In this document: in pieces, positions 28,513-40,408 of the stretch
How the letters are laid out: every line of letters starts with the position of its first letter
Position numbering within the stretch: the first letter of the stretch is position 1
Virus record (IMG/VR): IMGVR_UViG_3300031669_000001
Coordinates: 281,070-345,069 of that record
Direction: 5' to 3' (one strand)
DNA length: 64,000 nt
Notes under the pieces: model-generated
Seen by the model: the letters and a program-made list of their open reading frames with translations, nothing else
Databases searched by the model: none
Told to the model about the DNA's origin: nothing
Translations under genes and position numbers: made by a program

Positions 28513-28746
28513 ATCGCGACAGCGTCTGCGTGAATCTTGCCAGGGAATTTTCCTGTTTGTGTGATGTGAATTCCGCGCTCTTTCAGCTCACGAGTCTTTT
28601 CAACCCATTGATGACGAAGGTTACGAGTGACGCGGGATTTGCCGTAGAGAATTTGAGATTGTTTGACAAGCGCTTTTATAGAGTTCATTTTCGTTCTCAT
28701 CTAAATTAGATGAGCTATTATAACACAGAGATCCAAAAAGTACACA

Positions 28747-28778
28747 AGAAAAAGCCCCAGTCTCTTGGCGACTGAGGC
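28747..28778 (-). terminator. Intrinsic terminator
   Basis: GCCTCAGTC-GCCAAGA-GACTGGGGC followed by TTTTTCTT. Confidence 0.7.
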
Positions 28779-28810
28779 GCTGCCACGTTCCAAAGCCTTA
28801 GGCAAAGGAA

Positions 28811-29203
28811 CTATTTAAATACCGAGAGTGAAGCCTTTGCTTTTAGACCTTCATCGTTAGCGCTCTTGATGATCTTGTCGTTCTTCAAGACTACCACGTT
28901 AACTAGCTTGTACATCCCCTTCGACGCACCACTTTGATCGTGAACGCCATGAAATTCTTTACCGATATCCTTTACGTAGCTGTCATAGGCATTACCTGAG
29001 CTAGAGATGAAAGCGAAGCGATTCTTTTCATCAGGCTTCTTGCAGACTAGAATCGTATCTTCGCTATCTTTCCACTCTGAAGCTGCGGTGATAATATCTA
29101 CCGTACGACGACCGTAAAGTGCCATGGTGGCAGGAAGAATTACCCAATCACGAACTCCATAACGACGCTCGTTGAGAGTTAAAAGCTCTAGAAGTAAGTT
29201 CAT
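28811..29203 (-). CDS. Hypothetical protein, possible internal virion protein
   Basis: N-terminal MNLLLELLTLNE leader. Confidence 0.65.
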   Translation of the reverse strand: MNLLLELLTLNERRYGVRDWVILPATMALYGRRTVDIITAASEWKDSEDTILVCKKPDEKNRFAFISSSGNAYDSYVKDIGKEFHGVHDQSGASKGMYKLVNVVVLKNDKIIKSANDEGLKAKASLSVFK

Positions 29204-29694
29204 TTTGAAGCTTCCAGCGTTTCTAAGGCGCTCTTGAGAACAGCCTTACGATCAGCTGAAAGATTTTTACCTGCACGGTTGATGTAGAAGTTTAATGCAG
29301 ATACAGCACCCTTCTTATCAGCGTGAGATGACTTTAACCATTTAACGATAGCCGATGCAGAACCGTCAGCAAACAGTCCTTCTGGAGGATGCTTTTTGGT
29401 TTTAACGTCGCCAGACCACTTCAGCTCCATCAATTGTTCTAATGAAAGATCATCTTCCATGGATTCGTGAAGGCGCTTTTTAGCAGCTTCCAAAGTTGCC
29501 TTGCGATCAGCTGAGAGCTTCTTGCCGGCGCGGTTGATGTAGAAGTTGAGAGCGCCCATTGCGCTCTTAAGATCTTTGTGGGACGACTTCAACCAAGATG
29601 CGATCTCAGCAGCAGATCCAGTTGCAAAAAGATCTTCAGGTGGGTGCTTCTTTGTCTTGACGTCGCCAGACCATTTTAATTCGGATAGTAACAT
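29200..29694 (-). CDS. Tandem DUF3175-like domain protein
   Basis: Two copies of KWSGDVKTKKHPPE...ALNFYINRAGK.LSADRKA. Confidence 0.75.
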   Translation of the reverse strand: MLLSELKWSGDVKTKKHPPEDLFATGSAAEIASWLKSSHKDLKSAMGALNFYINRAGKKLSADRKATLEAAKKRLHESMEDDLSLEQLMELKWSGDVKTKKHPPEGLFADGSASAIVKWLKSSHADKKGAVSALNFYINRAGKNLSADRKAVLKSALETLEASK

Positions 29695-29749
29695 GATGGT
29701 GATCTCCTTATGCGCTTATTTACTATAGGGAGATCGAAACGCGAAAAAT

Positions 29750-30142
29750 TTACAGCAACTTAAGGTGCCCAGTTATCGCGTTAATCTTATCATTCTCTGC
29801 AGGACCAACAGAAATGCATGTATTGGTTGGAACTCCACTGAATTCTGTTAACCCACTATCAGTGATCAGCGAGCAGGTTATTCCAGCAGCTTTAGCCTTC
29901 TCTAATAGTTCAAGAAGCTCGGCTTCACTGTTAACACCGCAACAGATCTTCTTGAACACTCCTTTCATGAGCCACTCATCCATCTCAGGCGTAAGTGGGA
30001 TCATGAGGTAACGTGCTCCTCCATTGGCAACAAAAACACTTCCACTATCAACAACGGGTTTCATAGAAGCGTGAGAACCTTGGGCTACCATCTTACCCTT
30101 GCGCATGTTGAGGTCGGTCCTCATTACAATGACCTGTTTCAT
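29750..30142 (-). CDS. pth2: Peptidyl-tRNA hydrolase, Pth2 family
   Basis: KQVIVMRTDLNMRKGKMVAQGSHA, DSGLTEF, GP...ITGHLKLL. Confidence 0.93.
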   Translation of the reverse strand: MKQVIVMRTDLNMRKGKMVAQGSHASMKPVVDSGSVFVANGGARYLMIPLTPEMDEWLMKGVFKKICCGVNSEAELLELLEKAKAAGITCSLITDSGLTEFSGVPTNTCISVGPAENDKINAITGHLKLL

Positions 30143-30453
30143 TCGTATGAATCTGCCTGTACGAGGATAACTTGGAATTGATTTTTACCAAGCTTGATGT
30201 TAACGCATGAATCACCAACTATCAGCTTTGTGCCGTCCCAACCTTTCTTGCGAAGTCTAACTCCACGCTGAATCTCATCCCAGCGCTCGCGTTTTTCCCT
30301 CACAAACTTTCTATTTCCTTCTCGGTTTATCTCGGCACTTTTCTCAGGATTCTTACGGCGCCAGCGAGCATTTGCTTTTCCACCCGGAGTTTCAGGACGT
30401 ATTTCGCCTTTACGAGGGCGGCCTTTTTTGTAGCCAGTAGGTTTGTAAGCCAT
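30139..30453 (-). CDS. Basic AT-hook-like DNA-binding protein
   Basis: KKGRPRKG; highly basic. Confidence 0.65.
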   Translation of the reverse strand: MAYKPTGYKKGRPRKGEIRPETPGGKANARWRRKNPEKSAEINREGNRKFVREKRERWDEIQRGVRLRKKGWDGTKLIVGDSCVNIKLGKNQFQVILVQADSYE

Positions 30454-30464
30454 TTTTGTACTTT

Positions 30465-30512
30465 CAAAAGAAATAGGGTGTTCATTATATCATGAACACC
30501 CTACAGAGTAAA
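30465..30512 (-). terminator. Terminator hairpin overlapping the -10 box of an early promoter
   Basis: TAGGGTGTTCAT-GATATA-ATGAACACCCTA followed by TTTCTTTTG; TTTACT...TATAAT promoter embedded. Confidence 0.6.
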
Positions 30513-30744
30513 ATTTATTTACGGTTGAATGCGAAAGAATCTTACGTTGGTGAGAATTTGACCATTTGAGGTGCTGAACAAACTTCCATAACCTTCGTAA
30601 CGACAGTCTTTGAAGAGGGTTCTACCGTCTGTAATGACGGTGAATCTACTCTGTCTTTGACCGTGAACTCCATGTAGTTCAAAGTCAATTGGAGTTCCTA
30701 CTGGATATTCTTTGTCGATCTCTAGTATAATTTTTGTCATTTTT

Positions 30745-31002
30745 TTATTCGCAGCTTTGAGCTACAGCTTCAAGTTGAGCTTCATAGCCTTTACGAATTT
30801 CTATCTCGGCTAAAGCTTTCTTCGTTTTGACGAAGACGTCATCCTTTACGTCACCGGTATCTGTCAAGGGCATGACAGGTTTAGGTGGCAAAGTTACCTT
30901 GCAAGGAACCGTAACTAAAACATTGTGATCGACTATTTGTGGTTTTGTAGTTCCACAACCCACCAAAAGTAAGGCGGCTAGTATGGTTATAAGTTTCATC
31001 AT
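30745..31002 (-). CDS. Outer-membrane spanin (Rz1-like lipoprotein)
   Basis: Lipobox LLVGC, Pro-rich PCKVTLPPKP, terminal Cys. Confidence 0.8.
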   Translation of the reverse strand: MMKLITILAALLLVGCGTTKPQIVDHNVLVTVPCKVTLPPKPVMPLTDTGDVKDDVFVKTKKALAEIEIRKGYEAQLEAVAQSCE

Positions 31003-31391
31003 TTTGCTCCTGTGATGTAGTCATTGTACAGAAGATTAGCTGACACACATAAATTCGCTGGAGCTGTAGCTTGAGCTAATAGAATGTCTTGAGCTTTTTT
31101 GCTGTAGTATTTGACTTTTGCATCTGCTGCAGCGAGCGCAACTTTTGCAGCTGCTTCTCTACTTGCTGCATCTGCTGCTAACTTTGCGATAGCGTCAGAG
31201 TCAGCTCTGATTTTCAGAACGAGGCCGTCATTCTGAGATTGAAGCACCGCGGTCGCAGTTACTTGTTGTGTGTATTGCTTGTGATAGTAGTATGTACCAC
31301 CACTCAATGCAGCGATCAAAAGCATGACCGCCAAGCCGATGTAAAGTGAAGTTGATCCACCAGCGAAAAATCCGAATAGCTTGCTGAACAT
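30999..31391 (-). CDS. Inner-membrane spanin (Rz-like)
   Basis: N-terminal transmembrane helix, Ala-rich coiled coil, C-terminal Cys; TATAAATA late promoter at 31419-31426. Confidence 0.8.
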   Translation of the reverse strand: MFSKLFGFFAGGSTSLYIGLAVMLLIAALSGGTYYYHKQYTQQVTATAVLQSQNDGLVLKIRADSDAIAKLAADAASREAAAKVALAAADAKVKYYSKKAQDILLAQATAPANLCVSANLLYNDYITGAK

Positions 31392-31431
31392 TTTAGTCTC
31401 CCTATAATATAGCAAGACTATTTATACGCTT

Positions 31432-31565
31432 TGGTTGTGAAGGTAGGGATCCAACCTACATCTACTGACCCATGGAATCAGCGCTTTTAAGATCTGTATC
31501 TCGGCTACATCGTAACGGATTTTTACCGTTACTCTCTTTTTGTCGGTCACTTTAAGCTACTTCAC
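31432..31565 (-). ncRNA. tRNA-like RNA with ~60-nt D-loop expansion
   Basis: GTGAAG/CTTCAC acceptor, GCTT/AAGC D-stem, CTGAT-TCCATGG-GTCAG arm, GTAGG-TTGGATC-CCTAC T-arm, ACCA end. Confidence 0.65.
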
Positions 31566-31595
31566 TGGTGCGCTCGGGGAGACTCGAACTCCCAC
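31566..31595 (-). pseudogene. Orphan 3' half of a tRNA-Leu
   Basis: GTGGGAGTTCGAGTCTCCCCGAGCGCACCA, resembling the 3' end of the tRNA at 32122-32206. Confidence 0.7.
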
Positions 31596-31606
31596 ATACT
31601 TCTCCG

Positions 31607-32122
31607 TTAACGCGTTGATCCAATCTCCTCGAGAAGTTCTTGTAACGTGATAGATGATTTACTACTCTTCGAGGCATTTGCCTTGTGTGGAATAAACTCA
31701 CAGTTTGCAGGATGAGAGATAATCCTCGGATCTATTTGATTCTTGAATCCAAAATCTATTGATAGTCTGTGATCTCTAACGACTCCGCTAGGATTCGTCT
31801 TCCTTGAATACATTCCATACTTTACTAATAGATCATAACCTTTGATAGTTTCGATTATGCCTGCCAAATTGAAAGTGCATTGCTCTTGATAGATCATCTT
31901 TTTCAATTTTGCTTCGTCGGTAACTTTGCGTTTACCGAGTTTTGTTTCTGACATACTTTGAATTCTGGGGTGACTTTCTTTCGTGAGACCTTTTGACCAA
32001 GTAGTTTTCCCTTTATTTGGAGAAGGTATAGGTTGAAGCCCATTTCGATGAATCAGACACCACCGATAATGAGCGTTCAAAGATTGAGCATTTGGGAAGT
32101 CTCGTTCACATTTACATTTCAT
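31607..32122 (-). CDS. Zn-finger plus HNH-like putative homing endonuclease
   Basis: CKCERDF..QSLNAHYRWC; RDH...HPANC...N..K; its ATG overlaps the tRNA CCA. Confidence 0.7.
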   Translation of the reverse strand: MKCKCERDFPNAQSLNAHYRWCLIHRNGLQPIPSPNKGKTTWSKGLTKESHPRIQSMSETKLGKRKVTDEAKLKKMIYQEQCTFNLAGIIETIKGYDLLVKYGMYSRKTNPSGVVRDHRLSIDFGFKNQIDPRIISHPANCEFIPHKANASKSSKSSITLQELLEEIGSTR

Positions 32123-32206
32123 GGTGCGACTGGGGAGAGTCGAACTCCCATGCCTTTCGGCACACGGACCTCAACCGTGCGCGGCTACCAATTACGCCAC
32201 AGTCGC
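32122..32206 (-). tRNA. tRNA-Leu(GAG), long variable arm
   Basis: CACGG-TTGAGGT-CCGTG; ACCA end. Confidence 0.9.
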
Positions 32207-32208
32207 AT

Positions 32209-32508
32209 TTAGTCTTTTTTACGCCTTATAAACGTTAAGTTACTAAGCAAGATAGCTCTTTCATAATCATCTGGACCTCCAACAAGAATTGAAGTACTAG
32301 ACATTGGATCGACTTTTACTATAGCTTCATCACCATTTTTACCGTGATAGAGATATAAAACGTCACCTTCAATCTTTCCTCCAGAAGATGATTTTGGAAC
32401 TTTTATGAACGTTAATTCACCAACCTCCGGCAAAAATTCATCATCAGTTTGAACTCTATCATATATTTTCGCTTCTTCACCGCCAGCATAAGGACCAAAA
32501 TAATTCAT
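32209..32508 (-). CDS. Hypothetical protein
   Basis: 99-aa ORF with SD. Confidence 0.6.
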   Translation of the reverse strand: MNYFGPYAGGEEAKIYDRVQTDDEFLPEVGELTFIKVPKSSSGGKIEGDVLYLYHGKNGDEAIVKVDPMSSTSILVGGPDDYERAILLSNLTFIRRKKD

Positions 32509-32698
32509 TTATGATTTCCTTCTAATGTGTTACATTCCAGTAGATCCTAAATCCAGCAATTGATCTTCCAGCTACAAACACGATGGTCACATAAGGAGCT
32601 TGATCACGCAACTTACGATCTATCTGAATCGTCGGCAGTGACCAAGCCTCTGGAACGTAAGCGGTCTGTTTTGAAGTTATCTTTTGAAACTCTATCAT

Positions 32699-32911
32699 TT
32701 AGTACAACTTTGGAGGCAACAGATTCGTTGCAAGACGCTTTTGATGGCGCTTCACTGCAGATGCATGCTTGCGCTTGCGTTCTGTTGTTGGCTTCTCATA
32801 AGCTTCACGATCTCTAAGTTCATTCAGCAATCCTGTCTTCTCGACAGCTCGTTTGAACCTGCGCATTGCAGACTCAAACGATTCATGTTCTTTCACATAA
32901 ATTTTTGTCAT
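32699..32911 (-). CDS. rpsU: 30S ribosomal protein bS21
   Basis: [39 protein letters not shown]...LPPKLY. Confidence 0.95.
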
Positions 32912-33250
32912 TTATTCTCCAGTTACGCTTGGATAATCAGCATCGATCATGTCCAGATACGCTAGCGGGCTCATGCCTGGTTCCAAGATCTTGATGTTTG
33001 TGAATCCATTTTCTTCGGTGATCAGTGAATCTTTTTCGTCAATAGAACCACGAAACTTGCCATCACCTTTCTTATGCATGAGCTTTCCCTTTGGACCAGA
33101 GTCAGAGGGATCTACGGAACCCCATTGACGATGCGGATCGCCCATAGGTTCAACAAAGTATTTCTTGCCTGTACGAGGTGAATGATAGATGAAGCGACCC
33201 GTCTCATCAGTATGAGTGAGGAACTTTGTTACAATCTTGGGGTCAATCAT
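32912..33250 (-). CDS. Conserved phage hypothetical protein
   Basis: TDETGRF...RTGKKYFVEP...WGSVDP; the start may extend to 33337. Confidence 0.7.
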   Translation of the reverse strand: MIDPKIVTKFLTHTDETGRFIYHSPRTGKKYFVEPMGDPHRQWGSVDPSDSGPKGKLMHKKGDGKFRGSIDEKDSLITEENGFTNIKILEPGMSPLAYLDMIDADYPSVTGE

Positions 33251-33338
33251 TTTTCTTCTCCATATATCTTCTTCCAAGCAAGCTTCGCAGCGAGCGCGGT
33301 AAGGTACTCCATGTTTACAACTTCCAGTATCTTCCATA

Positions 33339-33464
33339 GGTGCAACGTGAGAGGACTCGAACCTCCATACTCTCCAAGTTCTTGGTTTCCCAAGGTAGTC
33401 GGATCGAACCGACGGTCTCCGGCACCGATTGGGCCGTGCCTACCCCATTGCAGGACCACGTTAC
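33339..33464 (-). ncRNA. tRNA-like RNA with two T-arms
   Basis: GTAACGTG/CACGTTGC-ACC outer stem; GTCGG-TTCGAT-CCGAC and GAGG-TTCGAGT-CCTC arms. Confidence 0.6.
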
Positions 33465-33583
33465 ATAGAATATACCATTAGAGCTGAAGCCAATCGGCAG
33501 ATACCTCTCTCTGTTTTCAGGTTCTTTCCACGGTCTATTCAAGAGCCAATCGAATTCGCGCTTATAGTAACCAATATATCTCC

Positions 33584-33673
33584 TGGCGGAAGATGGAGCA
33601 ATTGAAGCCCAACCTGTTTCCAGGTCGATCTGTTTTCGAGGCAGTCCCGGCACGCCTGTCCGGTTCATCTTCC
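33584..33673 (-). tRNA. tRNA-Ser(CGA), 8/4 fold
   Basis: GGAAGATG/CATCTTCC 8-bp acceptor, GGGC/GCTC 4-bp T-stem, loop CTCGAAA, long variable arm, GCCA. Confidence 0.8.
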
Positions 33674-34107
33674 GTGGCCAGAGGTGGTCATCCTCTGGAT
33701 GTTGCGATCTATGGGTTAGGTCTGACGAAACCTCTAAGACTCTTCTCGCGGCCCTAGTTACGTCCTGCCCCTAGCTTTGACGTTATCTTGGCATTTCCCC
33801 GGCGGGAACGGAACAACTACTGGATCTAATCCTTCACGAGTTATGCGAGTAGTACGCAATACCGTATATCGTTGCCGTGATCCACGACGGAGGTACAGTC
33901 ATCGGCTCCTCAGGTATGTCTTTGATGATGTTGCCAAGCTCGCTCTTGTACCGCCGTTCGGCCTTGAAAACGAAACCTATAGCTCAATCAAACAACACTA
34001 AGCATCCTGAACTACTACAACACTAGATTAAAGAGTGAATCTGCAGATTCGCTGCCCGACACAGTAACATCAGGGGCTGTACCGAGCAATCTTCAAACAT
34101 CATGTTA

Positions 34108-34143
34108 TGGTTGACTGCGAGGGATTCAACCTCTACGCAATCA
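34108..34143 (-). ncRNA. tRNA minihelix (acceptor stem and T-arm only)
   Basis: TGATTGC-GTA-GAGG-TTGAATC-CCTC-GCAGTCA-ACCA. Confidence 0.55.
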
Positions 34144-34146
34144 ATT

Positions 34147-34202
34147 GAGCAGCAAAATTAATGACCTTTGCTTTTATCACTGGGACGGTCAGGCAGGGAC
34201 TC
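34147..34202 (-). repeat. 56-nt element, copy A (candidate small RNA)
   Basis: 51 of 56 bases identical to 36745-36800. Confidence 0.8.
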
Positions 34203-34232
34203 AAATTCTTATTTAATCGAAGCAGCTTCGTC

Positions 34233-34508
34233 TTAGTAATGCTCGCGAGTTACGCTGTACTGCTTTTTTGCTTCTGGGTTAGGAACGCGTTCACCTTCAG
34301 GATTTTCTTCGGTTACATTGATAACCATCGTGAAGTATTCTTCTTCTTTTTGTTTCTTCAACGCATTTGCTTCTCCAACCGTCAAGCATTGTTTCGGACC
34401 GAAAACATATTTGCTACACTTTTTATCCATATCAATGGTTGGATTGCCGTTACGATCTTGTGGACCGTCAGGATGCAATTGCATTACTGATACATGGTAA
34501 GTTGCCAT
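34233..34508 (-). CDS. Hypothetical protein
   Basis: 91-aa ORF downstream of the early promoter at 34542-34570. Confidence 0.65.
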   Translation of the reverse strand: MATYHVSVMQLHPDGPQDRNGNPTIDMDKKCSKYVFGPKQCLTVGEANALKKQKEEEYFTMVINVTEENPEGERVPNPEAKKQYSVTREHY

Positions 34509-34576
34509 TGTTGTGTACTTTCATGTGTAGTTGAGATGATCATTATAACACAAAGAACAAAAAAGTACACATCATT

Positions 34577-34654
34577 TGGTGCGAGTGGAGGGATTCGAAC
34601 CCACACTGTACGACTTCTAAAGCCGTTGCCTCCTACCAATTGCGCTACACTCGC
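34577..34654 (-). tRNA. tRNA-Leu(TAG), short variable arm
   Basis: ACGGC-TTTAGAA-GTCGT; ACCA. Confidence 0.88.
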
Positions 34655-34744
34655 GGCAGAGAATACCAGAATCGAACTGGAAGCCCTCGCGGGCTCACAT
34701 CGCTTTCCAAGCGAGCCTTGTCGACCAGACAAGGATTATTCTCT
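34655..34744 (-). tRNA. tRNA-Ser(GGA), 8/4 fold
   Basis: AGAGAATA/TATTCTCT acceptor, CCAG/CTGG T-stem, 7-bp D-stem, loop TTGGAAA; ends G-CC abutting the next tRNA. Confidence 0.8.
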
Positions 34745-34766
34745 ATTTGTTGTTCCTTAGTAAGCA

Positions 34767-34852
34767 TGGTGGGTGTGAGAGGATTCGAACCTTTCAATGC
34801 TTGCGCGCCGGCATATTGGCCGGTGGGAATCACCATTTCCCCTAGACTACCC
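34767..34852 (-). ncRNA. tRNA-like RNA with 6-nt anticodon loop (anticodon undetermined)
   Basis: CCGGC-CAATAT-GCCGG; bulged acceptor; intact TTCGAAT loop and ACCA. Confidence 0.6.
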
Positions 34853-34853
34853 A

Positions 34854-34937
34854 TGGTGCCGCCGAAGGGATTCGAACCCTCAATGGCCGAAGCTCTCAAC
34901 CTCGTAACTGTGCCAGATTTGTATTAGCCACAGCGGC
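34854..34937 (-). tRNA. tRNA-Leu(GAG), short variable arm, enlarged D-loop
   Basis: CGAGG-TTGAGAG-CTTCG; ACCA. Confidence 0.8.
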
Positions 34938-34938
34938 A

Positions 34939-35562
34939 TTATTTGTTGCTTCTAATACTTTCCACCGTTCCCGGTGACATGTCTCTCATCTGAACTGCTA
35001 ACGCTTTCAACCTCTTGAAAGATGTTGGTAAGCAGTTGTCAGGAACATCTCCAGCCTGTTCAACGATCAGAGCAGCCATCTCACCAAATAGTAACACAGG
35101 CAGGTGAGTCTTACGCATCATGTCATCATGCTTCGCTCCGTCGATCAAAACTCCATTCGCGTGAGTTACGATCTCGTTGCTTATCATTCTGAACAGTTCA
35201 ATAACCTTCGAGCTGTCCCTCGTTGAATGTGTTACGATGCAGGTCCTACCTTCTTTTGGACTGTTAGGCCCAAACATAGGGTGAATTCCTGTAACGTGAT
35301 CACTGTGCGTTAAACAGATCTCGTTAGATCTCCGCTGAACTGAACAAACGTTGATTAGGTGCTTTCCAACGTGCCTTACTGCAACTTCATCAAATGCAGA
35401 GATCGGAACTGCTAGGATGATAAAATCGGCGTCATCTTCATCTACGATCTTGGCGTGTGATTCCAATTCCCTCTTCAAGAATGAACCAAACACTCCCATA
35501 CCAACTATGGCGATCTTCATCTCTGTTGGTGGTGCAGCCGAAAATGGACCTGTATCGTTCAT
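34939..35562 (-). CDS. tyrA: Prephenate dehydrogenase-like protein
   Basis: KIAIVGMGVFG, IILAVP, NVCSVQ, GIHPMFGP, HDDMM; SD GAGGTG before 35562. Confidence 0.82.
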   Translation of the reverse strand: MNDTGPFSAAPPTEMKIAIVGMGVFGSFLKRELESHAKIVDEDDADFIILAVPISAFDEVAVRHVGKHLINVCSVQRRSNEICLTHSDHVTGIHPMFGPNSPKEGRTCIVTHSTRDSSKVIELFRMISNEIVTHANGVLIDGAKHDDMMRKTHLPVLLFGEMAALIVEQAGDVPDNCLPTSFKRLKALAVQMRDMSPGTVESIRSNK

Positions 35563-35585
35563 GATGCACCTCTGGTTATAAAAAT

Positions 35586-35660
35586 TGGCGGGCCTGCAGG
35601 GAATCGAACCCCGCTGTTCGGTTTTGGAGACCGACATAATAGCCGATATATGACAAGCCC
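35586..35660 (-). tRNA. tRNA-Trp(CCA)
   Basis: TCGGT-CTCCAAA-ACCGA; GCCA. Confidence 0.85.
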
Positions 35661-35774
35661 GGTCCGAGGAGCGGGGTTCGAACCCGCATGCCATAGGCGG
35701 GAGATTTTGAGAAACATTCACGTTAGTAAATGTTTGAAAAAGTCTCCTGAGTATACCAGTTTCTCCACCCTCGG
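35661..35774 (-). tRNA. tRNA-Leu(CAA) with ~31-nt insertion/intron in the anticodon loop
   Basis: GGAGA-CT[TTTTCAAACATTTACTAACGTGAATGTTTCT]CAAAA-TCTCC; otherwise a canonical class II body. Confidence 0.75.
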
Positions 35775-35800
35775 ATCAACGTTTCTTTTGGTGCGATATT

Positions 35801-36523
35801 TCAAATTCCAATAGCAAATTTCAAATCTTCACAATCTATCAATCTAATCTTTCCAGAAATAAATTTGGAATAATTTCCAATATTCTTTTCATCTCTAATC
35901 AAATAAATTTTGATATCTGGATGATCTTTAAAAACTTTTTGATATTTTACAATATCTCTTTGTGATAACCAACCTTTGACTTCAATAAAAACATTTTCAA
36001 AAATAGAGAAATCTGGCGTATAAATTTTATGATCCCCATATTTGATTCTTGGCCGAGATATCGAATAACCTAATTCTAAAAGTTTTAATCCTACATTGTA
36101 CTCCCATGTTCCTTGAACTTTAATTCCACCAACTTCAAACCATTTAATATGCGGAGAAGTTTCTAGATATTTAATTCTAGCTTCTGAGATTTTTCTTTTT
36201 GCATCTTCAGAAAGATTAAATCTTCTTCCTAGATTACCTTTACTTATTTTTCTTCTTGTCTCTTCGTGATTTGAAACAATTTCTTCTAATTTCTTTCCCT
36301 TAAATTTGCTAAGTTTGCCTTTGAATCCTGATGGTTCTGGGATTTTGCCATCTCTATGAATTAAACACCATCTATAATGAGAATTTAACGATTGAGAATT
36401 TAAGAATTCCCGTCCACAATCACATTTTAATTCAAACAATAAATTATGAACAATCCTACGATGTTTATTCAAATTTCCATTTGATGAAAATTTTTTATTG
36501 CAATCTTTACATTTTAGATCCAT
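35801..36523 (-). CDS. Zn-finger plus PD-(D/E)xK putative homing endonuclease
   Basis: C2H2 fingers, NUMOD3-like segment, YTPDF..IEVKGW; AT-rich; TATAAATA at 36529-36536. Confidence 0.8.
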   Translation of the reverse strand: MDLKCKDCNKKFSSNGNLNKHRRIVHNLLFELKCDCGREFLNSQSLNSHYRWCLIHRDGKIPEPSGFKGKLSKFKGKKLEEIVSNHEETRRKISKGNLGRRFNLSEDAKRKISEARIKYLETSPHIKWFEVGGIKVQGTWEYNVGLKLLELGYSISRPRIKYGDHKIYTPDFSIFENVFIEVKGWLSQRDIVKYQKVFKDHPDIKIYLIRDEKNIGNYSKFISGKIRLIDCEDLKFAIGI

Positions 36524-36561
36524 AAATCTATTTATAGAAGACCATAGAGTATACCGAATTC

Positions 36562-36648
36562 TGGTGCGCGATGTCGGACTCGAACCGACACGCCCGTGAG
36601 GACCCCGACGTCTAAAGACGGGAAGACTACCAATTCCATCAATCGCGC
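36562..36648 (-). tRNA. tRNA-Leu(TAG), long variable arm
   Basis: Loop TTTAGAC; ACCA. Confidence 0.85.
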
Positions 36649-36655
36649 TTACTTC

Positions 36656-36739
36656 TGGTACCCTCGACCGGATTCGAACCGGTAAAAACTCTAGATTTTA
36701 AATCTAGCGGCTGTGCCAATTTACCTAAGTCACGAGGGC
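36656..36739 (-). tRNA. tRNA-Leu(TAA), short variable arm, enlarged D-loop
   Basis: CTAGA-TTTAAAA-TCTAG; ACCA. Confidence 0.82.
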
Positions 36740-36744
36740 ACATA

Positions 36745-36800
36745 GAGCAGCAATATTTACGACCTTTGCTTTTATCACTGGGACGGTCAAGCAGAGACTC
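36745..36800 (-). repeat. 56-nt element, copy B (candidate small RNA)
   Basis: Fills the gap between tRNA-Trp and tRNA-Leu; matches 34147-34202. Confidence 0.8.
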
Positions 36801-36804
36801 TATT

Positions 36805-36878
36805 TGGCAGGCTGTGAAGGAATCGAACCCTCGTCCGGAGTTTTGGAGGCTCCGTCATTACCACTATGTTAACAACCC
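36805..36878 (-). tRNA. tRNA-Trp(CCA)
   Basis: Loop CTCCAAA; GCCA. Confidence 0.85.
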
Positions 36879-36969
36879 GGCGGAAGATGGCGGATTCGAA
36901 CCCCCTAACCCTTTAACAGGATCAAACAGTTTTCAAGACTGTGCTGCTCTCCGAGACAGTAGATCTTCC
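36879..36969 (-). tRNA. tRNA-Ser(TGA)
   Basis: ACAGT-CTTGAAA-ACTGT, long variable arm; ends G-CC. Confidence 0.85.
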
Positions 36970-37056
36970 GGCGGAAGGTCAGGGAATCGAACCCTCAACC
37001 CTTCCGGGTTGGCGACGGCTTTCAAAACCGTTTGTGTACCATACACGCTACAATCC
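36970..37056 (-). tRNA. tRNA-Ser(TGA) with two acceptor-stem mismatches
   Basis: ACGGT-TTTGAAA-GCCGT; acceptor GGATTGT/ACCTTCC. Confidence 0.7.
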
Positions 37057-37155
37057 GGTGGGCATCCGTGGAGTTACACCACGATTAAGTCTCGTTTTGA
37101 GGCGAGAGGTCGCTGATCTGGCGACTGAGGCAGTTATTACCATCGCTAGATGCCC
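37057..37155 (-). ncRNA. tRNA-like RNA with an extra hairpin
   Basis: GGGCATC/GATGCCC-ACC; GTCGC-CAGATCA-GCGAC and TCTCG-CCTCAAAA-CGAGA arms; CGTGG-TGTAACT-CCACG. Confidence 0.6.
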
Positions 37156-37159
37156 ATAT

Positions 37160-37249
37160 TGGTGGATCACGGACGGAATCGAACCTCATGCCCAGAGGGA
37201 GAAGCTTTACAGGCTTCCGACAGCACCAGCAGTCCTTATTACGCGATCC
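37160..37249 (-). tRNA. tRNA-Tyr(GTA), atypical D-arm
   Basis: GAAGC-CTGTAAA-GCTTC; TAATAAG linker then GACTGC-TGGT-GCTGTC. Confidence 0.78.
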
Positions 37250-37254
37250 ATGTT

Positions 37255-37860
37255 CTAAATCAATTTCAATTCTTTTAGCTTCTTTTTATCCCAGAACTCA
37301 AATTTCACATCAGGATATTTCATTTGCCATTCTTCAAACTTTTCTTTATTAGCTGGTCTCCAATAACCTTTCACTTCAATAATTGTTCCATCTTCTAGAA
37401 CAAAATCTGGTCTGTAAGATCGTTTTCCGTCTAACTTGAAAACAACTTCTCCGTACTTCCAACTAATATCTTGTTCATCAAGATATTTTGCAACTTTTAC
37501 TTCCCAGCTAGAATCCATTCTAATGTTCTTGTAAAGAGATTGTCTATCTCCTCGATGATTTCCGTTCTTATTTCCAATCATCTTTTTTGCAATCTTTTCA
37601 CACGTTGTAAGCGAATGGCTTTTATTCTTGAAAGCTGCGTCATGATCTAGTAGATGACGTTTTACTCCTTCTGAAATATTGCCTATTCTTGGGTCTGTAA
37701 ATTTATTCAATCCTTTAGACCATCCACGATTTAAGAAAATTTTATCGCGAAATTCTTTACTCTTTGGATTTTCTAAGCACCATCTTGTATGATTTGCTTT
37801 CTTCGACTTATCCGCCGAGCTAAATTCAAATTCATTGCTGCAAAATTTACATTTCCACAT
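37255..37860 (-). CDS. Zn-finger plus PD-(D/E)xK putative homing endonuclease
   Basis: CKFC..NHTRWC; DSSWE, YRPDF, IIEVKGY; CATAAATA upstream. Confidence 0.8.
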   Translation of the reverse strand: MWKCKFCSNEFEFSSADKSKKANHTRWCLENPKSKEFRDKIFLNRGWSKGLNKFTDPRIGNISEGVKRHLLDHDAAFKNKSHSLTTCEKIAKKMIGNKNGNHRGDRQSLYKNIRMDSSWEVKVAKYLDEQDISWKYGEVVFKLDGKRSYRPDFVLEDGTIIEVKGYWRPANKEKFEEWQMKYPDVKFEFWDKKKLKELKLI

Positions 37861-37907
37861 ATCTTTTCTCCTGAAACTATTTATGGAAACGGGTTAAACT
37901 AACTAAT

Positions 37908-37996
37908 TGGTCCCCTCAGCCGGATTCGAACCGGCAATACACTTACGTGGCTCTGCAGTCTGAGTGCAGCGACTTTACCAATTTGCCCATGAGGGG
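37908..37996 (-). tRNA. tRNA-Leu(CAG)
   Basis: CTGCA-CTCAGAC-TGCAG; ACCA. Confidence 0.9.
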
Positions 37997-38006
37997 AAAG
38001 TCTATT

Positions 38007-38091
38007 TGGTGCGTCTGCCTGGAATCGAACCAAGATGATCAGAGATAACCGGGTTACAGCCGGTGCCGCCTCCATAACGGTCTACAAACGC
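38007..38091 (-). tRNA. tRNA-Tyr(GTA)
   Basis: ACCGG-CTGTAAC-CCGGT; ACCA. Confidence 0.85.
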
Positions 38092-38092
38092 T

Positions 38093-38181
38093 TGGTGAGT
38101 TGGTAGTGAATCGAACACTATGCCCTAGGGAAGAGTTTTACAGACTCCTGACAGCACCAGCTATCCTTATTGAACCAACTC
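38093..38181 (-). tRNA. tRNA-Tyr(GTA), atypical D-arm
   Basis: GGAGT-CTGTAAA-ACTCT; TTCAATAAG linker then GATAGC-TGGT-GCTGTC. Confidence 0.78.
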
Positions 38182-38184
38182 CAT

Positions 38185-38262
38185 TGGTACCCACGATCGG
38201 ATTCGAACCGACACTGTGTAGTTTTTGAAACTACTGCCTCCTACCAATTGCGCTACGTGGGC
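38185..38262 (-). tRNA. tRNA-Leu(CAA), short variable arm
   Basis: GTAGT-TTCAAAA-ACTAC; ACCA. Confidence 0.88.
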
Positions 38263-38266
38263 ATTC

Positions 38267-38355
38267 TGGTGGAAGGCTGAGTAATCGAAACCCAATCCCT
38301 TTCGGGATCGATCTGTTTAGCAAACAGTCACCGAGACCTCTCGGTTTAACCTTCC
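38267..38355 (-). tRNA. tRNA-Ser(GCT)
   Basis: Loop TTGCTAA, long variable arm GATCCC-GAAA-GGGATT; ACCA. Confidence 0.85.
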
Positions 38356-38386
38356 ATACAACCAAATTTTTAAAGATCTTACTTCT

Positions 38387-38418
38387 AAAACAACAAAGGC
38401 TACCAACTTGGTAGCCTT
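38387..38418 (-). terminator. Attenuator terminator (3:4) ahead of the tRNA array
   Basis: AAGGCTACC-AAGTT-GGTAGCCTT followed by TGTTGTTTT. Confidence 0.8.
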
Positions 38419-38443
38419 AGCTTAATTCGAGAGAAACTTTACT

Positions 38444-38536
38444 TCAAATTCCAGGCTTCTCGCAATCGCTAAGGCTCTTCGTCCACAGATAGGACGATGA
38501 GAGCAAACTTAGATATAAAGAGGAAGTCGTTTTCAT
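38444..38536 (-). CDS. Putative attenuator leader peptide MKTTSSLYLSLLSSSYLWTKSLSDCEKPGI
   Basis: 30 codons; codons 5-18 are exclusively Ser/Leu/Tyr/Trp; overlaps alternative hairpins. Confidence 0.78.
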   Translation of the reverse strand: MKTTSSLYLSLLSSSYLWTKSLSDCEKPGI

Positions 38537-38544
38537 GATAAGTT

Positions 38545-38617
38545 TATTTATATGGGTGCAAAAGTTTTTAAAATTTGACAGTAAAAGCATTATAACATGG
38601 TCTGGAAGAATGTACAC
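38545..38617 (-). promoter_or_regulatory. Tandem early (sigma70-like) and late (TATAAATA) promoters of the tRNA operon
   Basis: GTGTAC...TGTTATAAT at 38617-38589; TATAAATA at 38552-38545. Confidence 0.7.
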
Positions 38618-38790
38618 TTATTTTTGAATCTTTTTTGGCATCTCTCCAGAAGGAACCGGCTTGGTCGGAAACAGCATCGTGCTCATTCGAACATTATCAC
38701 CGATAGTTTGAAAGATCATGCCGCCATTACCATAGATGCGAACTGTTCCATCTTGATGGACCTGAACTTCAACATGAAGAAAGTGTTCCA

Positions 38791-39075
38791 TCATTTCCAG
38801 AGCTTACACTTTGGAAGTTCAGCGAATTCGAATGAATAAACTCTAGCATCGAATATGTGTGTTTCAGTTGTGAGCTTTCCTTCTTGAAAGTGAGCACAAG
38901 CTTTAATGCAATTACCTTTTTGAAAAGGACAACTGGCGCTAAGCATCTTCGTTTCAGCTGTGCTGATCGCAGCGAGTCTCTTTTTCGTCATCTCGGCTTT
39001 ACGAGCTTCTTCGAGCTTTTTCTCGGTAAGCTTTTTAAGCTTTCGCTTTTCAAAAAAGTTTTTGATCAATTTCAT
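38791..39075 (-). CDS. Hypothetical protein
   Basis: 94-aa ORF just after the early promoter at 39082-39110. Confidence 0.6.
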   Translation of the reverse strand: MKLIKNFFEKRKLKKLTEKKLEEARKAEMTKKRLAAISTAETKMLSASCPFQKGNCIKACAHFQEGKLTTETHIFDARVYSFEFAELPKCKLWK

Positions 39076-39129
39076 TCGGCCATTATAACACCACTCTGCA
39101 AAAAGTACACTAATTTGTGTAAATAGAAG

Positions 39130-39504
39130 ATGATATTTTCAGAACTTCTTTTCGAATACTCTTCTGCAAACCCATTCGTTGGGATCGTCTCGATGATAGA
39201 TCTCCGAATTCGCCAAGTAGGAGCAGCGGCTCATGCAAGCAACCATACGTCAGTGTTCATCTCTTCACTTAAAAACCAGCTCAACACTCTCCTCAAATTC
39301 CTGGATTCAGGATCTAATTGGAACGTTCCAGAGCCTAAGCTGAGATCAGACTTACACGCTGCTCTGCCTGAAGTCAAGCGCCACGTCAACGCAGCAATTT
39401 CAGCGTTGACGGCCGGCGATGTAAATAAAGCTAGAGGCCAACTCCTTGCAGCTCGTAAAGTTGCAGTGAAAAGATCTCACCTACAATTTGGGGACATTGA
39501 ATGA
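39130..39504 (+). CDS. Hypothetical late protein
   Basis: TGTAAATA upstream; MIFSELLFE leader. Confidence 0.65.
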   Translation: MIFSELLFEYSSANPFVGIVSMIDLRIRQVGAAAHASNHTSVFISSLKNQLNTLLKFLDSGSNWNVPEPKLRSDLHAALPEVKRHVNAAISALTAGDVNKARGQLLAARKVAVKRSHLQFGDIE

Positions 39505-39725
39505 ATCTATCTCAAGCTAACAAGCAGACGCTGGCAACTTACTGCGCGACAGGTGGAAAGGTTTATGAAGTTGCTTACGATCCAACAATAGTTGGAACTA
39601 AAGGCGGAACATCTACTCCTGAAGCGGATGCGATCGCTGCAGGTTTAATCCAATGGCACAAAGAATCCACGACAAATTTAATAGAAGTGATCTACACTTC
39701 AAGCGTCTGTCCTGCTTACGTATGA
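39501..39725 (+). CDS. Hypothetical protein
   Basis: ATGA overlaps on both sides. Confidence 0.65.
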   Translation: MNLSQANKQTLATYCATGGKVYEVAYDPTIVGTKGGTSTPEADAIAAGLIQWHKESTTNLIEVIYTSSVCPAYV

Positions 39726-40408
39726 TCTCTTTCAAAAATCTACTAACAGATTCTAATGAACAAAGCGCAGGCTTTGAATATCTGCCAAACTCTCGAATGA
39801 TGGGTAACGTCAACGTAAAAGCTGGTAGATACTATCTCATTCCCTTCTCGCTTAGAGCTAGCATGCAGATTATGCCTGTTATCATGAGCGTAAATTCTGA
39901 AATAGGTTTAAAGATAGAACTTATCGAGAGAACCATTATCAACAAAACGTTGGTGTTAGGCCCCAATAATAAAGTTCACTATTCTGTTGGAGTCTATCTT
40001 TATGGTGGATATTGTACCGAGGATAATGAAACGTGGTCTAGCGTTGTAACTTTTGGACGCTGTGGATATTCATCTTTTGCTTACGCGATAGATGAAGTTC
40101 AAGCTGACGGACTTACAATGGCACCAATAGCACAGTCAATTATCGTTCAAGATAATTCTGCTATGTTAGTTGGTGCAAATTACACAGTTGGAGTTTCAAC
40201 GTTACAAAATCAAAGCTACCCTATGAAGCTTGGAGCTAATTGGACGATGCTTTCAGATTGTTTTGATGAAAGCGTTGTGCCAAACATGATGACGGGGAGT
40301 TCTGTGTTAGGAGATGCAAATCCATCCTGGAAGCAATTGGCAGCAGATGGTAGTGATGGGCCTTACCTTGAAAAGGCATTGATAGCCTGTGAGCTATCTC
40401 ACAGTTAA
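39722..40408 (+). CDS. Hypothetical protein, possibly structural
   Basis: Coupled ORF. Confidence 0.65.
   Translation: MISFKNLLTDSNEQSAGFEYLPNSRMMGNVNVKAGRYYLIPFSLRASMQIMPVIMSVNSEIGLKIELIERTIINKTLVLGPNNKVHYSVGVYLYGGYCTEDNETWSSVVTFGRCGYSSFAYAIDEVQADGLTMAPIAQSIIVQDNSAMLVGANYTVGVSTLQNQSYPMKLGANWTMLSDCFDESVVPNMMTGSSVLGDANPSWKQLAADGSDGPYLEKALIACELSHS

What the first reader, a model, noticed from the sequence alone, without database searches (positions are those of the whole stretch)
38387..38617. Codon-sampling leader-peptide attenuator controlling the phage tRNA operon
Seen: after early and late promoters comes ORF 38536-38444: ATG AAA ACG ACT TCC TCT TTA TAT CTA AGT TTG CTC TCA TCG TCC TAT CTG TGG ACG AAG AGC CTT AGC GAT TGC GAG AAG CCT GGA ATT TGA. 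It uses each of the six Leu codons exactly once and all six Ser codons, plus Tyr and Trp. Codons 5-18 are only Ser, Leu, Tyr or Trp, exactly the specificities of the downstream tRNAs. The RNA has mutually exclusive pairings: 1:2 (38504-38492 with 38484-38474), 2:3 antiterminator (AGCCTTAGC 38476-38468 with GCTAAGGCT 38421-38413) and 3:4 terminator (38418-38396 plus a U-rich tail) about 30 nt before the first tRNA. Known: this is the layout of trp/his/leu attenuators, which control amino-acid biosynthesis or synthetase genes. Inference: stalling at any depleted or cleaved host isoacceptor triggers read-through into the replacement tRNAs, making an inducible counter-defence sensor. I do not know of this being described for phage tRNA arrays. 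Caveat: no clear SD, so translation may be near-leaderless from the late promoter.
Basis: partly seen in the sequence, partly recalled or inferred. Interest (0 to 1): 0.95.

Follow-up and report, generated by a model that had tools for sequence, protein, structure and literature searches.

The report
Leader-peptide attenuator gating phage tRNA genes
A 30-codon mini-gene and a switchable RNA hairpin sit in front of this giant phage's tRNA gene array, and the mini-gene is built from the very amino acids whose tRNAs lie downstream, so the phage probably measures its tRNA supply by translation and makes more tRNA when decoding stalls, a use of attenuation that I could not find described.

Summary
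The window is the last 64 kb of a 345-kb metagenomic jumbo phage, a distant relative of Ralstonia phage RsoM2USA.

ORF 38536-38444 (- strand) has a 14-codon run of only Ser, Leu, Tyr and Trp. This is the longest such run in all six frames of the genome, where 0.003 are expected. The tRNA array behind it holds only those four specificities.

I found 11 more leaders of the same build in 8 related phage genomes or contigs. One lies in the same genome, ahead of the tRNA cluster for the other 16 amino acids, and its peptide contains all 16.

Where relatives divide tRNAs differently between clusters, the leader peptides change with them. Of 99 cluster specificities, 95 are represented in the cognate leader.

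In 10 leaders folded and 2 read by eye, the terminator's 5' arm can instead pair with the 3' part of the ORF. Both helices show compensatory changes.

Sampling of every synonymous codon occurs only in this copy. The counter-defence role is untested, and there is no RNA or ribosome evidence yet.

Best reading: a ribosome-mediated attenuator acting as a tRNA-supply feedback sensor. It is a new variant of a known mechanism.

The parts
38589..38616 (-). Sigma-70-like promoter (TGTACA, 16 nt, TG-TATAAT) just after the stop of the upstream 58-aa ORF
   Evidence: Consensus scan, 10 of 12 matches with a TG extension. Function is not tested.
38545..38552 (-). TATAAATA box, inferred to be a T4-type late promoter, 8 nt before the leader ATG. 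A T4-like start would give a 0-3 nt 5' UTR.
   Evidence: Read from the sequence. The same box lies 5 or 8 nt before the ATG in W2, G2_1, L136 and L137, and further upstream in both RsoM2USA leaders. Genome-wide the motif is strand-biased (23 against 2) but not enriched overall.
38444..38536 (-). Leader ORF of 30 codons plus TGA (leader W1)
   Evidence: The frame is kept through a 3-nt indel in relative G002. It is also kept through 3 inserted nt in the ORF tail of a variant in soil run X2.
38483..38524 (-). Sensing block: codons 5-18, only Ser, Leu, Tyr and Trp
   Evidence: Longest such run in six frames of the genome. Over 10 leaders, 83% of residues before region 2 belong to the downstream tRNA set, against 39% from region 2 onward.
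38474..38504 (-). Hairpin 1 (38504-38492 pairs with 38484-38474). It lies inside the sensing block and may act as a pause or anti-antiterminator hairpin.
   Evidence: Folds. One compensatory C-G to A-U change in G002, read from the alignment. Other leaders have a hairpin at this position with different sequence. It overlaps region 2 by 3 nt here and by 5 nt in L138.
38468..38476 (-). Region 2 (AGCCUUAGC, codons 21-23): 5' arm of the antiterminator
   Evidence: Pairs with region 3 when the terminator 3' arm is absent. Covariation: 97% of cells paired, 4 pairs changed on both sides, 0 of 500 shuffles as good.
38422..38467 (-). Apical part of the antiterminator hairpin. It holds the ORF tail and the stop codon (38446-38444).
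   Evidence: Folds. In the X2 variant the peptide tail changes while the inner helix is kept by compensatory changes.
38413..38421 (-). Region 3 (GCUAAGGCU): pairs with region 2 or, through AAGGCU, with region 4
   Evidence: Alignment column 135 covaries with its partner in region 2 and with its partner in region 4.
38385..38418 (-). Intrinsic terminator: 10-bp hairpin at 38418-38396 plus tail UGUUGUUUUAG
   Evidence: Terminator scan. Covariation: 100% of cells paired, 3 pairs changed on both sides. A GUUGUUUU-like tail recurs in most leaders.
32122..38360 (-). Regulated tRNA array for Leu, Ser, Tyr and Trp only, interrupted by endonuclease-like ORFs. The first element (38360-38272) is tRNA-Ser(GCU)-like.
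   Evidence: ARAGORN and Rfam. The first element is not called by either tool. Its positional homolog in L137 is called tRNA-Ser(gct).

Best explanation
This is a ribosome-mediated (leader-peptide) transcription attenuator placed between a late-type promoter and a phage tRNA gene array. It works as a feedback sensor of tRNA supply.

Shown by sequence, folding and comparison:
- There is a short ORF whose central codons are those decoded by the tRNAs encoded downstream.
- There is a hairpin with a U-tract terminator.
- A segment at the 3' end of the ORF (region 2) can pair with the terminator's 5' arm (region 3).

Inferred mechanism:
- The mRNA starts at or within 3 nt of the AUG and is translated without a Shine-Dalgarno sequence.
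- If all the needed charged tRNAs are plentiful, the ribosome runs through region 2 to the stop codon inside the antiterminator hairpin. This keeps region 2 unpaired while RNA polymerase makes regions 3 and 4. The terminator forms and transcription stops before the tRNAs.
- If any of the sampled tRNAs is scarce, the ribosome stalls in the sensing block upstream of region 2. Scarcity could arise early in infection, from a mismatch in codon usage with the host, or from tRNA loss.
- When the ribosome stalls, region 2 pairs with region 3 as region 3 emerges. The terminator cannot form and polymerase reads into the tRNA array.
- The new tRNAs then restore fast leader translation and shut the gate again.
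For: 1. Within the genome. The S/L/Y/W run is unique in the genome, and the array behind it encodes only Leu, Ser, Tyr and Trp tRNAs. A second leader of the same build lies at genome 232632 (-), with the same TATAAATA box, an MKTT start and a GUUGUUUU-tailed terminator. It heads the cluster for the other 16 amino acids. Its 42 residues contain all 16, no Ser, Tyr or Trp, and one Leu. The probability of both features in random windows is below 1e-4.

2. Across phages. I compared 12 leaders in 9 genomes or contigs.
- RsoM2USA's Leu/Ser/Tyr/Trp cluster also holds His, Val, Glu, Cys and Pro tRNAs, and its leader gains H, V, E, C and P.
- L138 has no tRNA-Trp, and its leader has no Trp codon.
- In G016 the Trp tRNA heads the other cluster, and that cluster's leader has Trp.
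- G016b and G020 have mixed clusters (V, Y, A, S, C, T, L, P, G, with K and M in G020), and their leaders match.
- Overall, 95 of 99 cluster specificities appear in the cognate leader (Fisher 1e-15). Permuting clusters among leaders never reached the observed fit in 200,000 trials. For pairs in one genome the in-set fraction is 0.59-0.98 with the leader's own cluster and 0.02-0.48 when swapped.
- Matching residues lie before region 2 (83% against 39% after it).

3. Structure. In all 10 leaders folded, RNA lacking the terminator 3' arm pairs 5-13 nt of the terminator 5' arm with the ORF 3' part or its stop codon. The full RNA forms the terminator in 9 of the 10. This pairing beats shuffled ORFs with p at or below 0.0125 in 7 of the 8 leaders tested. 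Both helices show two-sided compensatory changes, and one region-3 column covaries with both of its partners.

4. Reading frame. Indels inside the ORF are multiples of 3. The peptide tail is free to change while its helix is kept.

5. Known families. No Rfam family matches the leader at E up to 1.
Against: - There is no direct evidence of transcription start, termination, read-through or translation. The only RNA run found covers a tRNA, not the leader.
- There is no Shine-Dalgarno sequence, so translation rests on the leaderless inference. TATAAATA is not enriched genome-wide.
- At equilibrium the terminator wins in 9 of 10 leaders, so the switch must be kinetic.
- Hairpin 1 barely competes with region 2 in this copy. 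The state without any ribosome is therefore unclear.
- The last sensing codons (Trp at 38485-38483) lie only 6 nt before region 2. A ribosome stalled there might cover part of region 2.
- Two leaders (G2_1, L138) have poor U-tracts.
- One leader (L227) samples 16 amino acids while only 9 specificities follow it.
- G016b and G020 have sigma-70-like promoters between the terminator and the tRNAs. There the gate can control only part of tRNA expression.
- The leaders are related by descent, so the statistics overstate independence.
Confidence: 0.75

Rival explanations
1. It is the same attenuator hardware, but it reports general translation capacity or amino-acid starvation rather than the supply of the particular tRNAs encoded downstream. 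Any slowing of ribosomes would open the gate.
For: In this copy the antiterminator forms by default in naked RNA that lacks arm 4. Absence of translation for any reason should therefore also give read-through. Leader L227 samples more amino acids than its cluster supplies.
Against: A general sensor has no need for its codons to track cluster content. Yet 95 of 99 specificities are represented, and composition shifts with each repartition of tRNAs. Extra tRNA would not relieve amino-acid starvation.
Confidence: 0.12
2. It is a structured non-coding RNA or a processing and stability element of the tRNA precursor, comparable in position to the small stable RNAs of the T4 tRNA region. On this view the ORF is incidental.
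For: The fold is strong (z = -4.1) with a four-way-junction-like MFE. There is no Shine-Dalgarno sequence, and the element lies next to tRNAs.
Against: An incidental ORF would not keep its frame through indels. It would not carry the longest S/L/Y/W run in the genome, and it would not change composition in step with tRNA content in 12 cases. Covariation supports two mutually exclusive helices, not one static fold.
Confidence: 0.05
3. The ORF encodes a functional micro-protein, for example a small hydrophobic peptide. The hairpin is then just the terminator of that gene or of the upstream operon.
For: The S/L/Y/W-rich peptide could be membrane-active. Short late genes with TATAAATA close to the ATG are common in T4-like phages.
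Against: The peptide sequence is not conserved; only its composition is. The sister leaders are hydrophilic and sample 9-16 different amino acids. The peptide tail drifts freely while the RNA helix is kept. No Pfam match was found for the neighbouring small ORFs.
Confidence: 0.04
4. The match between leader and tRNA set is a chance or compositional artefact, and the hairpins are ordinary terminators.
For: The sample is small and the phages are related. The tRNA sets were taken from ARAGORN calls, and I chose the cluster limits myself.
Against: Each leader alone has P of about 2e-4 or less against random windows. Pairs within one genome discriminate own from swapped clusters. The position at the head of clusters was not even counted in these tests.
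Confidence: 0.04

Closest known systems
Leader-peptide attenuators of amino-acid operons in Enterobacteria (trp, his, leu, thr, ilvGMEDA, pheA). This comparison rests on my own knowledge of these textbook systems.
   Same: A short leader ORF rich in regulatory codons. A terminator hairpin with a U-tract. An antiterminator that shares bases with the terminator 5' arm. The terminator is the more stable fold, so the choice is kinetic and set by ribosome position. Several amino acids can be sensed by one leader, as in thr and ilv.
   Different: The regulated genes are tRNAs, not biosynthetic enzymes. The sensed quantity would be the product class itself (decoding capacity), which gives direct feedback. 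One leader samples up to 16 amino acids. The mRNA is leaderless or nearly so, from a phage late-type promoter. The stop codon lies inside the antiterminator hairpin rather than before region 2. The 1:2 competition is weak. The element is viral. There is no sequence or Rfam relationship.
pheST (pheM) attenuator of E. coli phenylalanyl-tRNA synthetase (own knowledge)
   Same: Leader-peptide attenuation applied to a component of the translation apparatus rather than to a biosynthetic pathway.
   Different: It senses one amino acid or tRNA and controls a synthetase protein. Here many specificities are sensed and the tRNA genes themselves are controlled.
T-box riboswitches (Rfam RF00230)
   Same: A terminator/antiterminator decision that depends on the tRNA pool.
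   Different: A T-box binds one uncharged tRNA directly through a specifier codon and the T-box sequence, without translation. No T-box match is present here, and there is a translated-looking ORF instead.
T4 tRNA gene cluster with its small stable RNAs (own knowledge)
   Same: A phage tRNA array with an adjacent small structured RNA, and TATAAATA-type late promoters in the phage.
   Different: No leader peptide or attenuator is known there to my knowledge. The present element has coding-frame and composition constraints.

Membership tests
Ribosome-mediated leader-peptide transcription attenuators | Short ORF in the transcribed leader, enriched in codons for the sensed amino acids or tRNAs | tested here: met
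   A 14-codon S/L/Y/W block, unique in the genome. The same principle holds in 11 further leaders.
Ribosome-mediated leader-peptide transcription attenuators | Intrinsic terminator between the leader ORF and the regulated genes | tested here: met
   A 10-bp G+C-containing hairpin plus a U-rich tail at 38418-38385. It is conserved with compensatory changes. Termination activity itself was not measured.
Ribosome-mediated leader-peptide transcription attenuators | Antiterminator helix mutually exclusive with the terminator, with its 5' arm within reach of the translating ribosome | tested here: met
   Region 2 (codons 21-23) pairs with region 3 and shares 6 nt with the terminator arm. Covariation supports it. 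The pairing is present in all 10 leaders folded.
Ribosome-mediated leader-peptide transcription attenuators | Upstream 1:2 hairpin that sequesters region 2 when the leader is not being translated (pause or anti-antiterminator) | tested here: inconclusive
   Hairpin 1 exists and shows one compensatory change, but it overlaps region 2 by only 3 nt here (1 nt in G002, 5 nt in L138). Naked RNA lacking arm 4 still forms the 2:3 helix.
Ribosome-mediated leader-peptide transcription attenuators | The leader is translated, and read-through rises when the cognate charged tRNA is limiting | not testable with these tools
   The only RNA run found does not cover the leader. This needs Term-seq, ribosome profiling or reporters.
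Curated Rfam leader families (Trp, His, Leu, Thr leaders and similar) | Match to a family covariance model | tested here: not met
   cmscan of 25000-40000 at E up to 1 lists only tRNA, tmRNA and chance hits. Nothing falls on 38385-38620.
T-box riboswitch | Specifier loop and conserved T-box sequence (match to RF00230) | tested here: not met
   No hit.

The most novel reading that the evidence does not exclude
A lineage of jumbo phages gates late transcription of each tRNA gene cluster with a leaderless mini-ORF that acts as a test message. The ORF contains at least one codon for nearly every tRNA specificity in that cluster. A single ribosome run therefore checks the whole set. Any shortfall opens the gate, whether it comes from codon-usage mismatch with the host, host shut-off, or tRNA cleavage by a defence nuclease. 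This would be the first leader-peptide attenuator known to control tRNA genes, the first that samples up to 16 amino acids at once, and a built-in sensor that could make phage tRNA supply inducible by tRNA-targeting immunity.
Probability: 0.6. Interest if true: 0.92.

Novelty: new variant of a known kind. Interest (0 to 1): 0.88.

Why it matters
Why phages carry tRNA genes has been argued for decades, with codon compensation and escape from tRNA-cleaving defences as the main proposals. How those genes are regulated has hardly been asked.

A leader peptide whose codons mirror the downstream tRNA set would mean the phage measures decoding capacity directly and makes tRNA on demand. That makes the question testable. 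The leader states which tRNAs the phage treats as limiting, and read-through can be measured under codon-usage mismatch or under anticodon-nuclease attack.

It also extends classical attenuation in three ways. It would apply to RNA genes, to viruses, and to sensing many amino acids in a single leader.

Finally, it offers a compact, programmable part for synthetic biology: recode the leader to choose what is sensed. One member sits in a cultured phage (RsoM2USA), so experiments are possible now.

Tried and rejected
Searches for relatives that failed or added little:
- DNA similarity of 38300-39100 against the phage collection gave no match.
- Relatives of the upstream 94-aa ORF in IMG/VR: none.
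- An exact scan for the terminator stem: none.
- The metagenome scan with a leader pattern returned only the source contig.
- The scan for TATAAATA-N-ATCATGAAAAC in IMG/VR gave 48 hits. Only the already known relative was real; the rest were unrelated ORFs beginning MKT.
- Relatives of a 353-aa gene upstream of the second leader: none.

What worked instead was finding related contigs through two conserved helicases and then reading the heads of their tRNA clusters.

Phages where no leader was found:
- Xanthomonas phage XacN1, where tRNAs are interspersed with ORFs.
- A 281-kb AT-rich contig, G009.
- The detector I wrote is crude and also missed one true case. These are therefore not proofs of absence.

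Ideas rejected or weakened:
- Sampling of every synonymous codon is not conserved.
- TATAAATA as a clearly enriched late promoter is not supported. The motif is only strand-biased.
- An N-terminally extended ORF from GTG 38617 is unlikely. That start lies upstream of both putative transcription starts, and its apparent conservation follows from promoter conservation.

RNA evidence: no reads on the leader.

Literature: five full-text searches and the RsoM2USA genome paper (PMC8504454) gave no mention of promoters, terminators or leader peptides at phage tRNA clusters.

Full report
**What the window is.** The window is the last 64 kb of a single 345,069-bp virus contig with 42.8% G+C. The metagenome scan identified it as a JGI metagenome contig. 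It encodes rIIA-like, TROVE/Ro60-like and helicase proteins and a permuted tmRNA. ARAGORN also tRNAs in the genome. The nearest named phage is Ralstonia jumbo phage RsoM2USA, with 42.6% identity over a 582-aa helicase.

The tRNA genes are sorted. Those for 16 amino acids lie at genome 221-232 kb, a few Gly and Met genes lie at 240-241 kb, and the array in the window (38360-32122, - strand) holds only Leu, Ser, Tyr and Trp.

**Checking the observation.**
- The ORF runs from 38536 to 38444 and has the codons as written.
- A sigma-70-like promoter lies at 38616-38589, and TATAAATA at 38552-38545.
- A 10-bp hairpin at 38418-38396 is followed by a U-rich tail.
The RNA folds much better than shuffles (z = -4.1).
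- The block of 14 consecutive Ser, Leu, Tyr or Trp codons is the longest in all six frames of the genome. The next longest is 9, and 0.003 are expected.
- No Rfam family matches the leader.

**A second copy in the same genome.** I looked at the head of the other large tRNA cluster, outside the window at genome 232632 on the - strand. It has the same device: CATATAAATA, 5 nt, then ATG AAA ACT ACC and onward, 43 codons in all. A hairpin with a GUUGUUUU tail follows.

Its peptide is MKTTITMKPFTQHARDCRINREVNQPAVNERVKNLVIGAGTQN. It contains all 16 amino acids served by that cluster, no Ser, Tyr or Trp, and a single Leu. The window's leader is MKTTSSLYLSLLSSSYLWTKSLSDCEKPGI. The two leaders therefore split the amino-acid alphabet the same way the two tRNA clusters do.

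**Relatives.** Direct DNA and neighbour-protein searches failed. I reached related contigs through two helicases and read the heads of their tRNA clusters. The leaders found are listed below. Downstream tRNA sets come from ARAGORN.

| Leader | Source | Peptide | Downstream tRNA set |
|---|---|---|---|
| G2_1 | G002 (L003) | MKTTLLSYLSLLLSSSYWLTMSPSCLEGINKV | L, S, Y, W |
| L136 | G003 | MKNFVSLLSLSYWSLSYLGQGLDVPTEGWDL | L, S, Y, W |
| L137 | G004 | MKNFNSYLSSLSYLSSYLWGRGLSYLVTE | L, S, Y, W |
| L138 | G005 | MKNTSLSYLSSSSLYSDGGFCMIG | L, S, Y, with no Trp tRNA |
| Rs_a | RsoM2USA | MTSHWHSYSLPVSSLELYCLEVEMT | P, C, E, Y, L, W, S, H, V |
| Rs_b | RsoM2USA | MFNAFNNNQRQNQAAMFDVRAIAFNAKNDIKGVALVE | M, I, N, Q, K, R, F, A, V, P, D, T |
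| L227 | G013 | all 16 non-S/L/Y/W amino acids, plus one Leu and one Trp | V, R, N, A, P, I, Q, C, M |
| G016a | G016 (L224) | GTG start; includes Trp | W, F, E, K, N, R, H, Q, D, V, I, A, T |
| G016b | G016 (L225) | (M)NALLTLTAVCLPGSGSSALVPAVYTRKGTQG | V, Y, A, S, C, T, L, P, G, I |
| G020 | G020 (L229) | MKNKEVIMLSIRTLSLPLVTSVACGGAYSPKLRKKSP | V, Y, K, A, P, T, L, S, G, C, M |

In addition, a closer variant of the window's own leader is present in soil run X2.

**Composition follows the tRNA set.** Over the 12 leaders, 95 of the 99 amino-acid specificities present in a cluster occur in its leader. The presence/absence table reads 95, 72, 4, 69 (Fisher 1e-15). Reassigning clusters to leaders at random never reached the observed fit in 200,000 trials.

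For the three genomes with two leaders, the fraction of residues in the tRNA set is 0.59-0.98 for the leader's own cluster and 0.02-0.48 for the swapped one. The most informative cases are the differences between phages:
- H, V, E, C and P appear in the RsoM2USA leader whose cluster gained those tRNAs.
- Trp is absent from the leader of the cluster that lacks tRNA-Trp.
- Trp is present in the G016 leader whose cluster begins with tRNA-Trp.

Matching residues form a block between codon 5 or so and region 2 (83% in set). The tail from region 2 onward is only 39% in set.

The leaders are homologous and the phages related, so these P values overstate independence. The qualitative pattern does not depend on them. 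One leader, L227, is broader than its cluster (55% in set).

**The RNA switch.** For 10 leaders I folded the RNA from the start codon, both with and without the 3' arm of the terminator.
- Without the 3' arm, in every case 5-13 nt of the terminator's 5' arm pair with a segment in the last part of the ORF or across its stop codon. This forms a long hairpin with the stop codon inside or at its base.
- With the 3' arm, the terminator is the minimum-energy fold in 9 of the 10. This is also the energetic relation in the classical trp leader (my own knowledge), where the choice is kinetic.
- The ORF-to-arm complementarity beats shuffled ORFs in 7 of the 8 leaders tested (p from below 0.0005 to 0.0125). 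Rs_a gave 0.095.

On an alignment of the four closest Leu/Ser/Tyr/Trp leaders:
- The antiterminator helix is 97% paired, with four pairs changed on both sides (0 of 500 shuffles as good; slid controls 6-56% paired).
- The terminator helix is 100% paired, with three such pairs.
- One region-3 position (A in the window, G in G002) is matched by U to C changes in both region 2 and region 4.

In the X2 variant, all 22 substitutions and 4 inserted nucleotides fall between region 2 and the terminator loop. The peptide tail changes from DCEKPGI to FCEITLKI with the frame kept, and the inner helix is restored by compensatory changes. The tail is therefore constrained as RNA and the block before it as codons. 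G016b and G020 show the same region 2, 3 and 4 layout by eye.

**Translation start.** None of the TATAAATA-proximal leaders has a Shine-Dalgarno sequence. The spacing from TATAAATA to the ATG is exactly 5 nt (W2, L137) or 8 nt (W1, G2_1, L136). With the T4 late-promoter geometry (my own knowledge, not tested here), the transcript would begin at the A of the AUG or 3 nt before it, giving a leaderless message.

Leaders with a longer 5' UTR (both in RsoM2USA and both in G016) have AGGA 7-13 nt upstream of the start. TATAAATA is strongly strand-biased in the genome (23 against 2) but not more frequent than expected. Its promoter role therefore rests on conservation at the leaders.

**Likely mechanism and its weak points.** The mechanism I favour is the one given under best explanation. 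Fast translation through region 2 allows the terminator to form, and stalling in the sensing block allows the antiterminator to form. Because the regulated product is the tRNA set being sampled, this is a direct negative feedback on decoding capacity.

The weak points are these:
- It is unknown what happens on untranslated RNA, because hairpin 1 competes little with region 2 here.
- The last sensing codons lie close to region 2.
- Two leaders have poor U-tracts.
- In G016b and G020, sigma-70-like promoters lie between the terminator and the tRNAs. The gate can then act only on transcripts from the upstream late-type promoter.
Simple supply feedback, for example for a 43% G+C phage in a G+C-rich host as discussed for RsoM2USA in PMC8504454, is the more economical reading.
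- Use of every synonymous Leu and Ser codon is confined to the window's copy.

**Comparison with known systems, and novelty.** In layout this works like the amino-acid operon attenuators. It meets their structural criteria apart from a convincing 1:2 competitor. It belongs to no curated RNA family and is not a T-box.

What differs is what is controlled (tRNA genes), who carries it (a virus), how many specificities one leader samples (3 to 16), and the leaderless start. Five full-text searches and the RsoM2USA genome paper gave no description of leader peptides or attenuators at phage tRNA clusters. The library is incomplete, so I cannot exclude an earlier report. I rate it a new variant of a known kind, of high interest, and testable now in a cultured phage.

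Noticed in passing
window 25486-25888 (-): Phage-encoded permuted (two-piece) tmRNA with tag ANDANGALALAA. Rfam tmRNA_permuted scores 84.5 bits, above its cut-off. This is notable next to a device that would rely on ribosome stalling.
   Followed up: no
window 50664-52214 (-): Protein with a TROVE (Ro60-like) domain, Pfam E = 2.7e-25. I did not look for a partner Y-like RNA nearby.
   Followed up: no
window 38360-38272 and 38181-38095 (-): Two tRNA-like elements in the array that default ARAGORN and Rfam do not call. The first looks like tRNA-Ser(GCU) with an odd 6-bp D arm. Its positional homolog in L137 is called tRNA-Ser(gct).
   Followed up: partly
window 37255-37860 and 35801-36523 (-): Endonuclease-like ORFs interrupt the tRNA array. 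They have weak Phage_endo_I matches, and one has a C2H2 zinc finger. They are probably homing endonucleases.
   Followed up: no
whole genome (G000): tRNA genes are sorted by type. The long-variable-arm tRNAs (Leu, Ser, Tyr) plus Trp sit in one array, the other 16 amino acids in another, and a CUA suppressor stands alone at 202.9 kb. Relatives sort them differently (G016, G020, RsoM2USA).
   Followed up: partly
window 38385-38365 (-); L003, L137, L138, L225 and L229 between terminator and first tRNA: A motif resembling CTTTAACAATTTGG or CTTTGACAATTTGG recurs between the attenuator terminator and the first tRNA in several relatives. It could be a promoter -35 region or a processing signal.
   Followed up: no
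window 38533-38526 with 38392-38385 (-); the same in the second leader at genome ~232629 and ~232450: Codons 2-4 (AAAACGAC or AAAACUACC) are complementary to the terminator tail GUUGUUUU and pair with it in the MFE folds. This would join the 5' and 3' ends of the terminated leader RNA. It may be a chance pairing of an A run with a U run.
   Followed up: no
genome ~232900-232700 (-) (L063) and L003 ~2010-1955 (-): Long near-perfect hairpins that begin GGAAACATT and end AATGTTTCC lie upstream of the second leader and of the G002 leader. Their function is unknown.
   Followed up: no
L061 ~11964-11842 (-), RsoM2USA record ~111,963-111,841: An unannotated small, very basic ORF (40 aa, rich in Lys, Arg and Gly) with a Shine-Dalgarno sequence lies between the Rs_a terminator and tRNA-Pro.
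   Followed up: no
window 34939-35559 (-): An ORF with a weak match to the prephenate dehydrogenase N-terminal domain lies inside the tRNA array. The longer GTG-started ORF listed for it overlaps tRNA-Trp.
   Followed up: no
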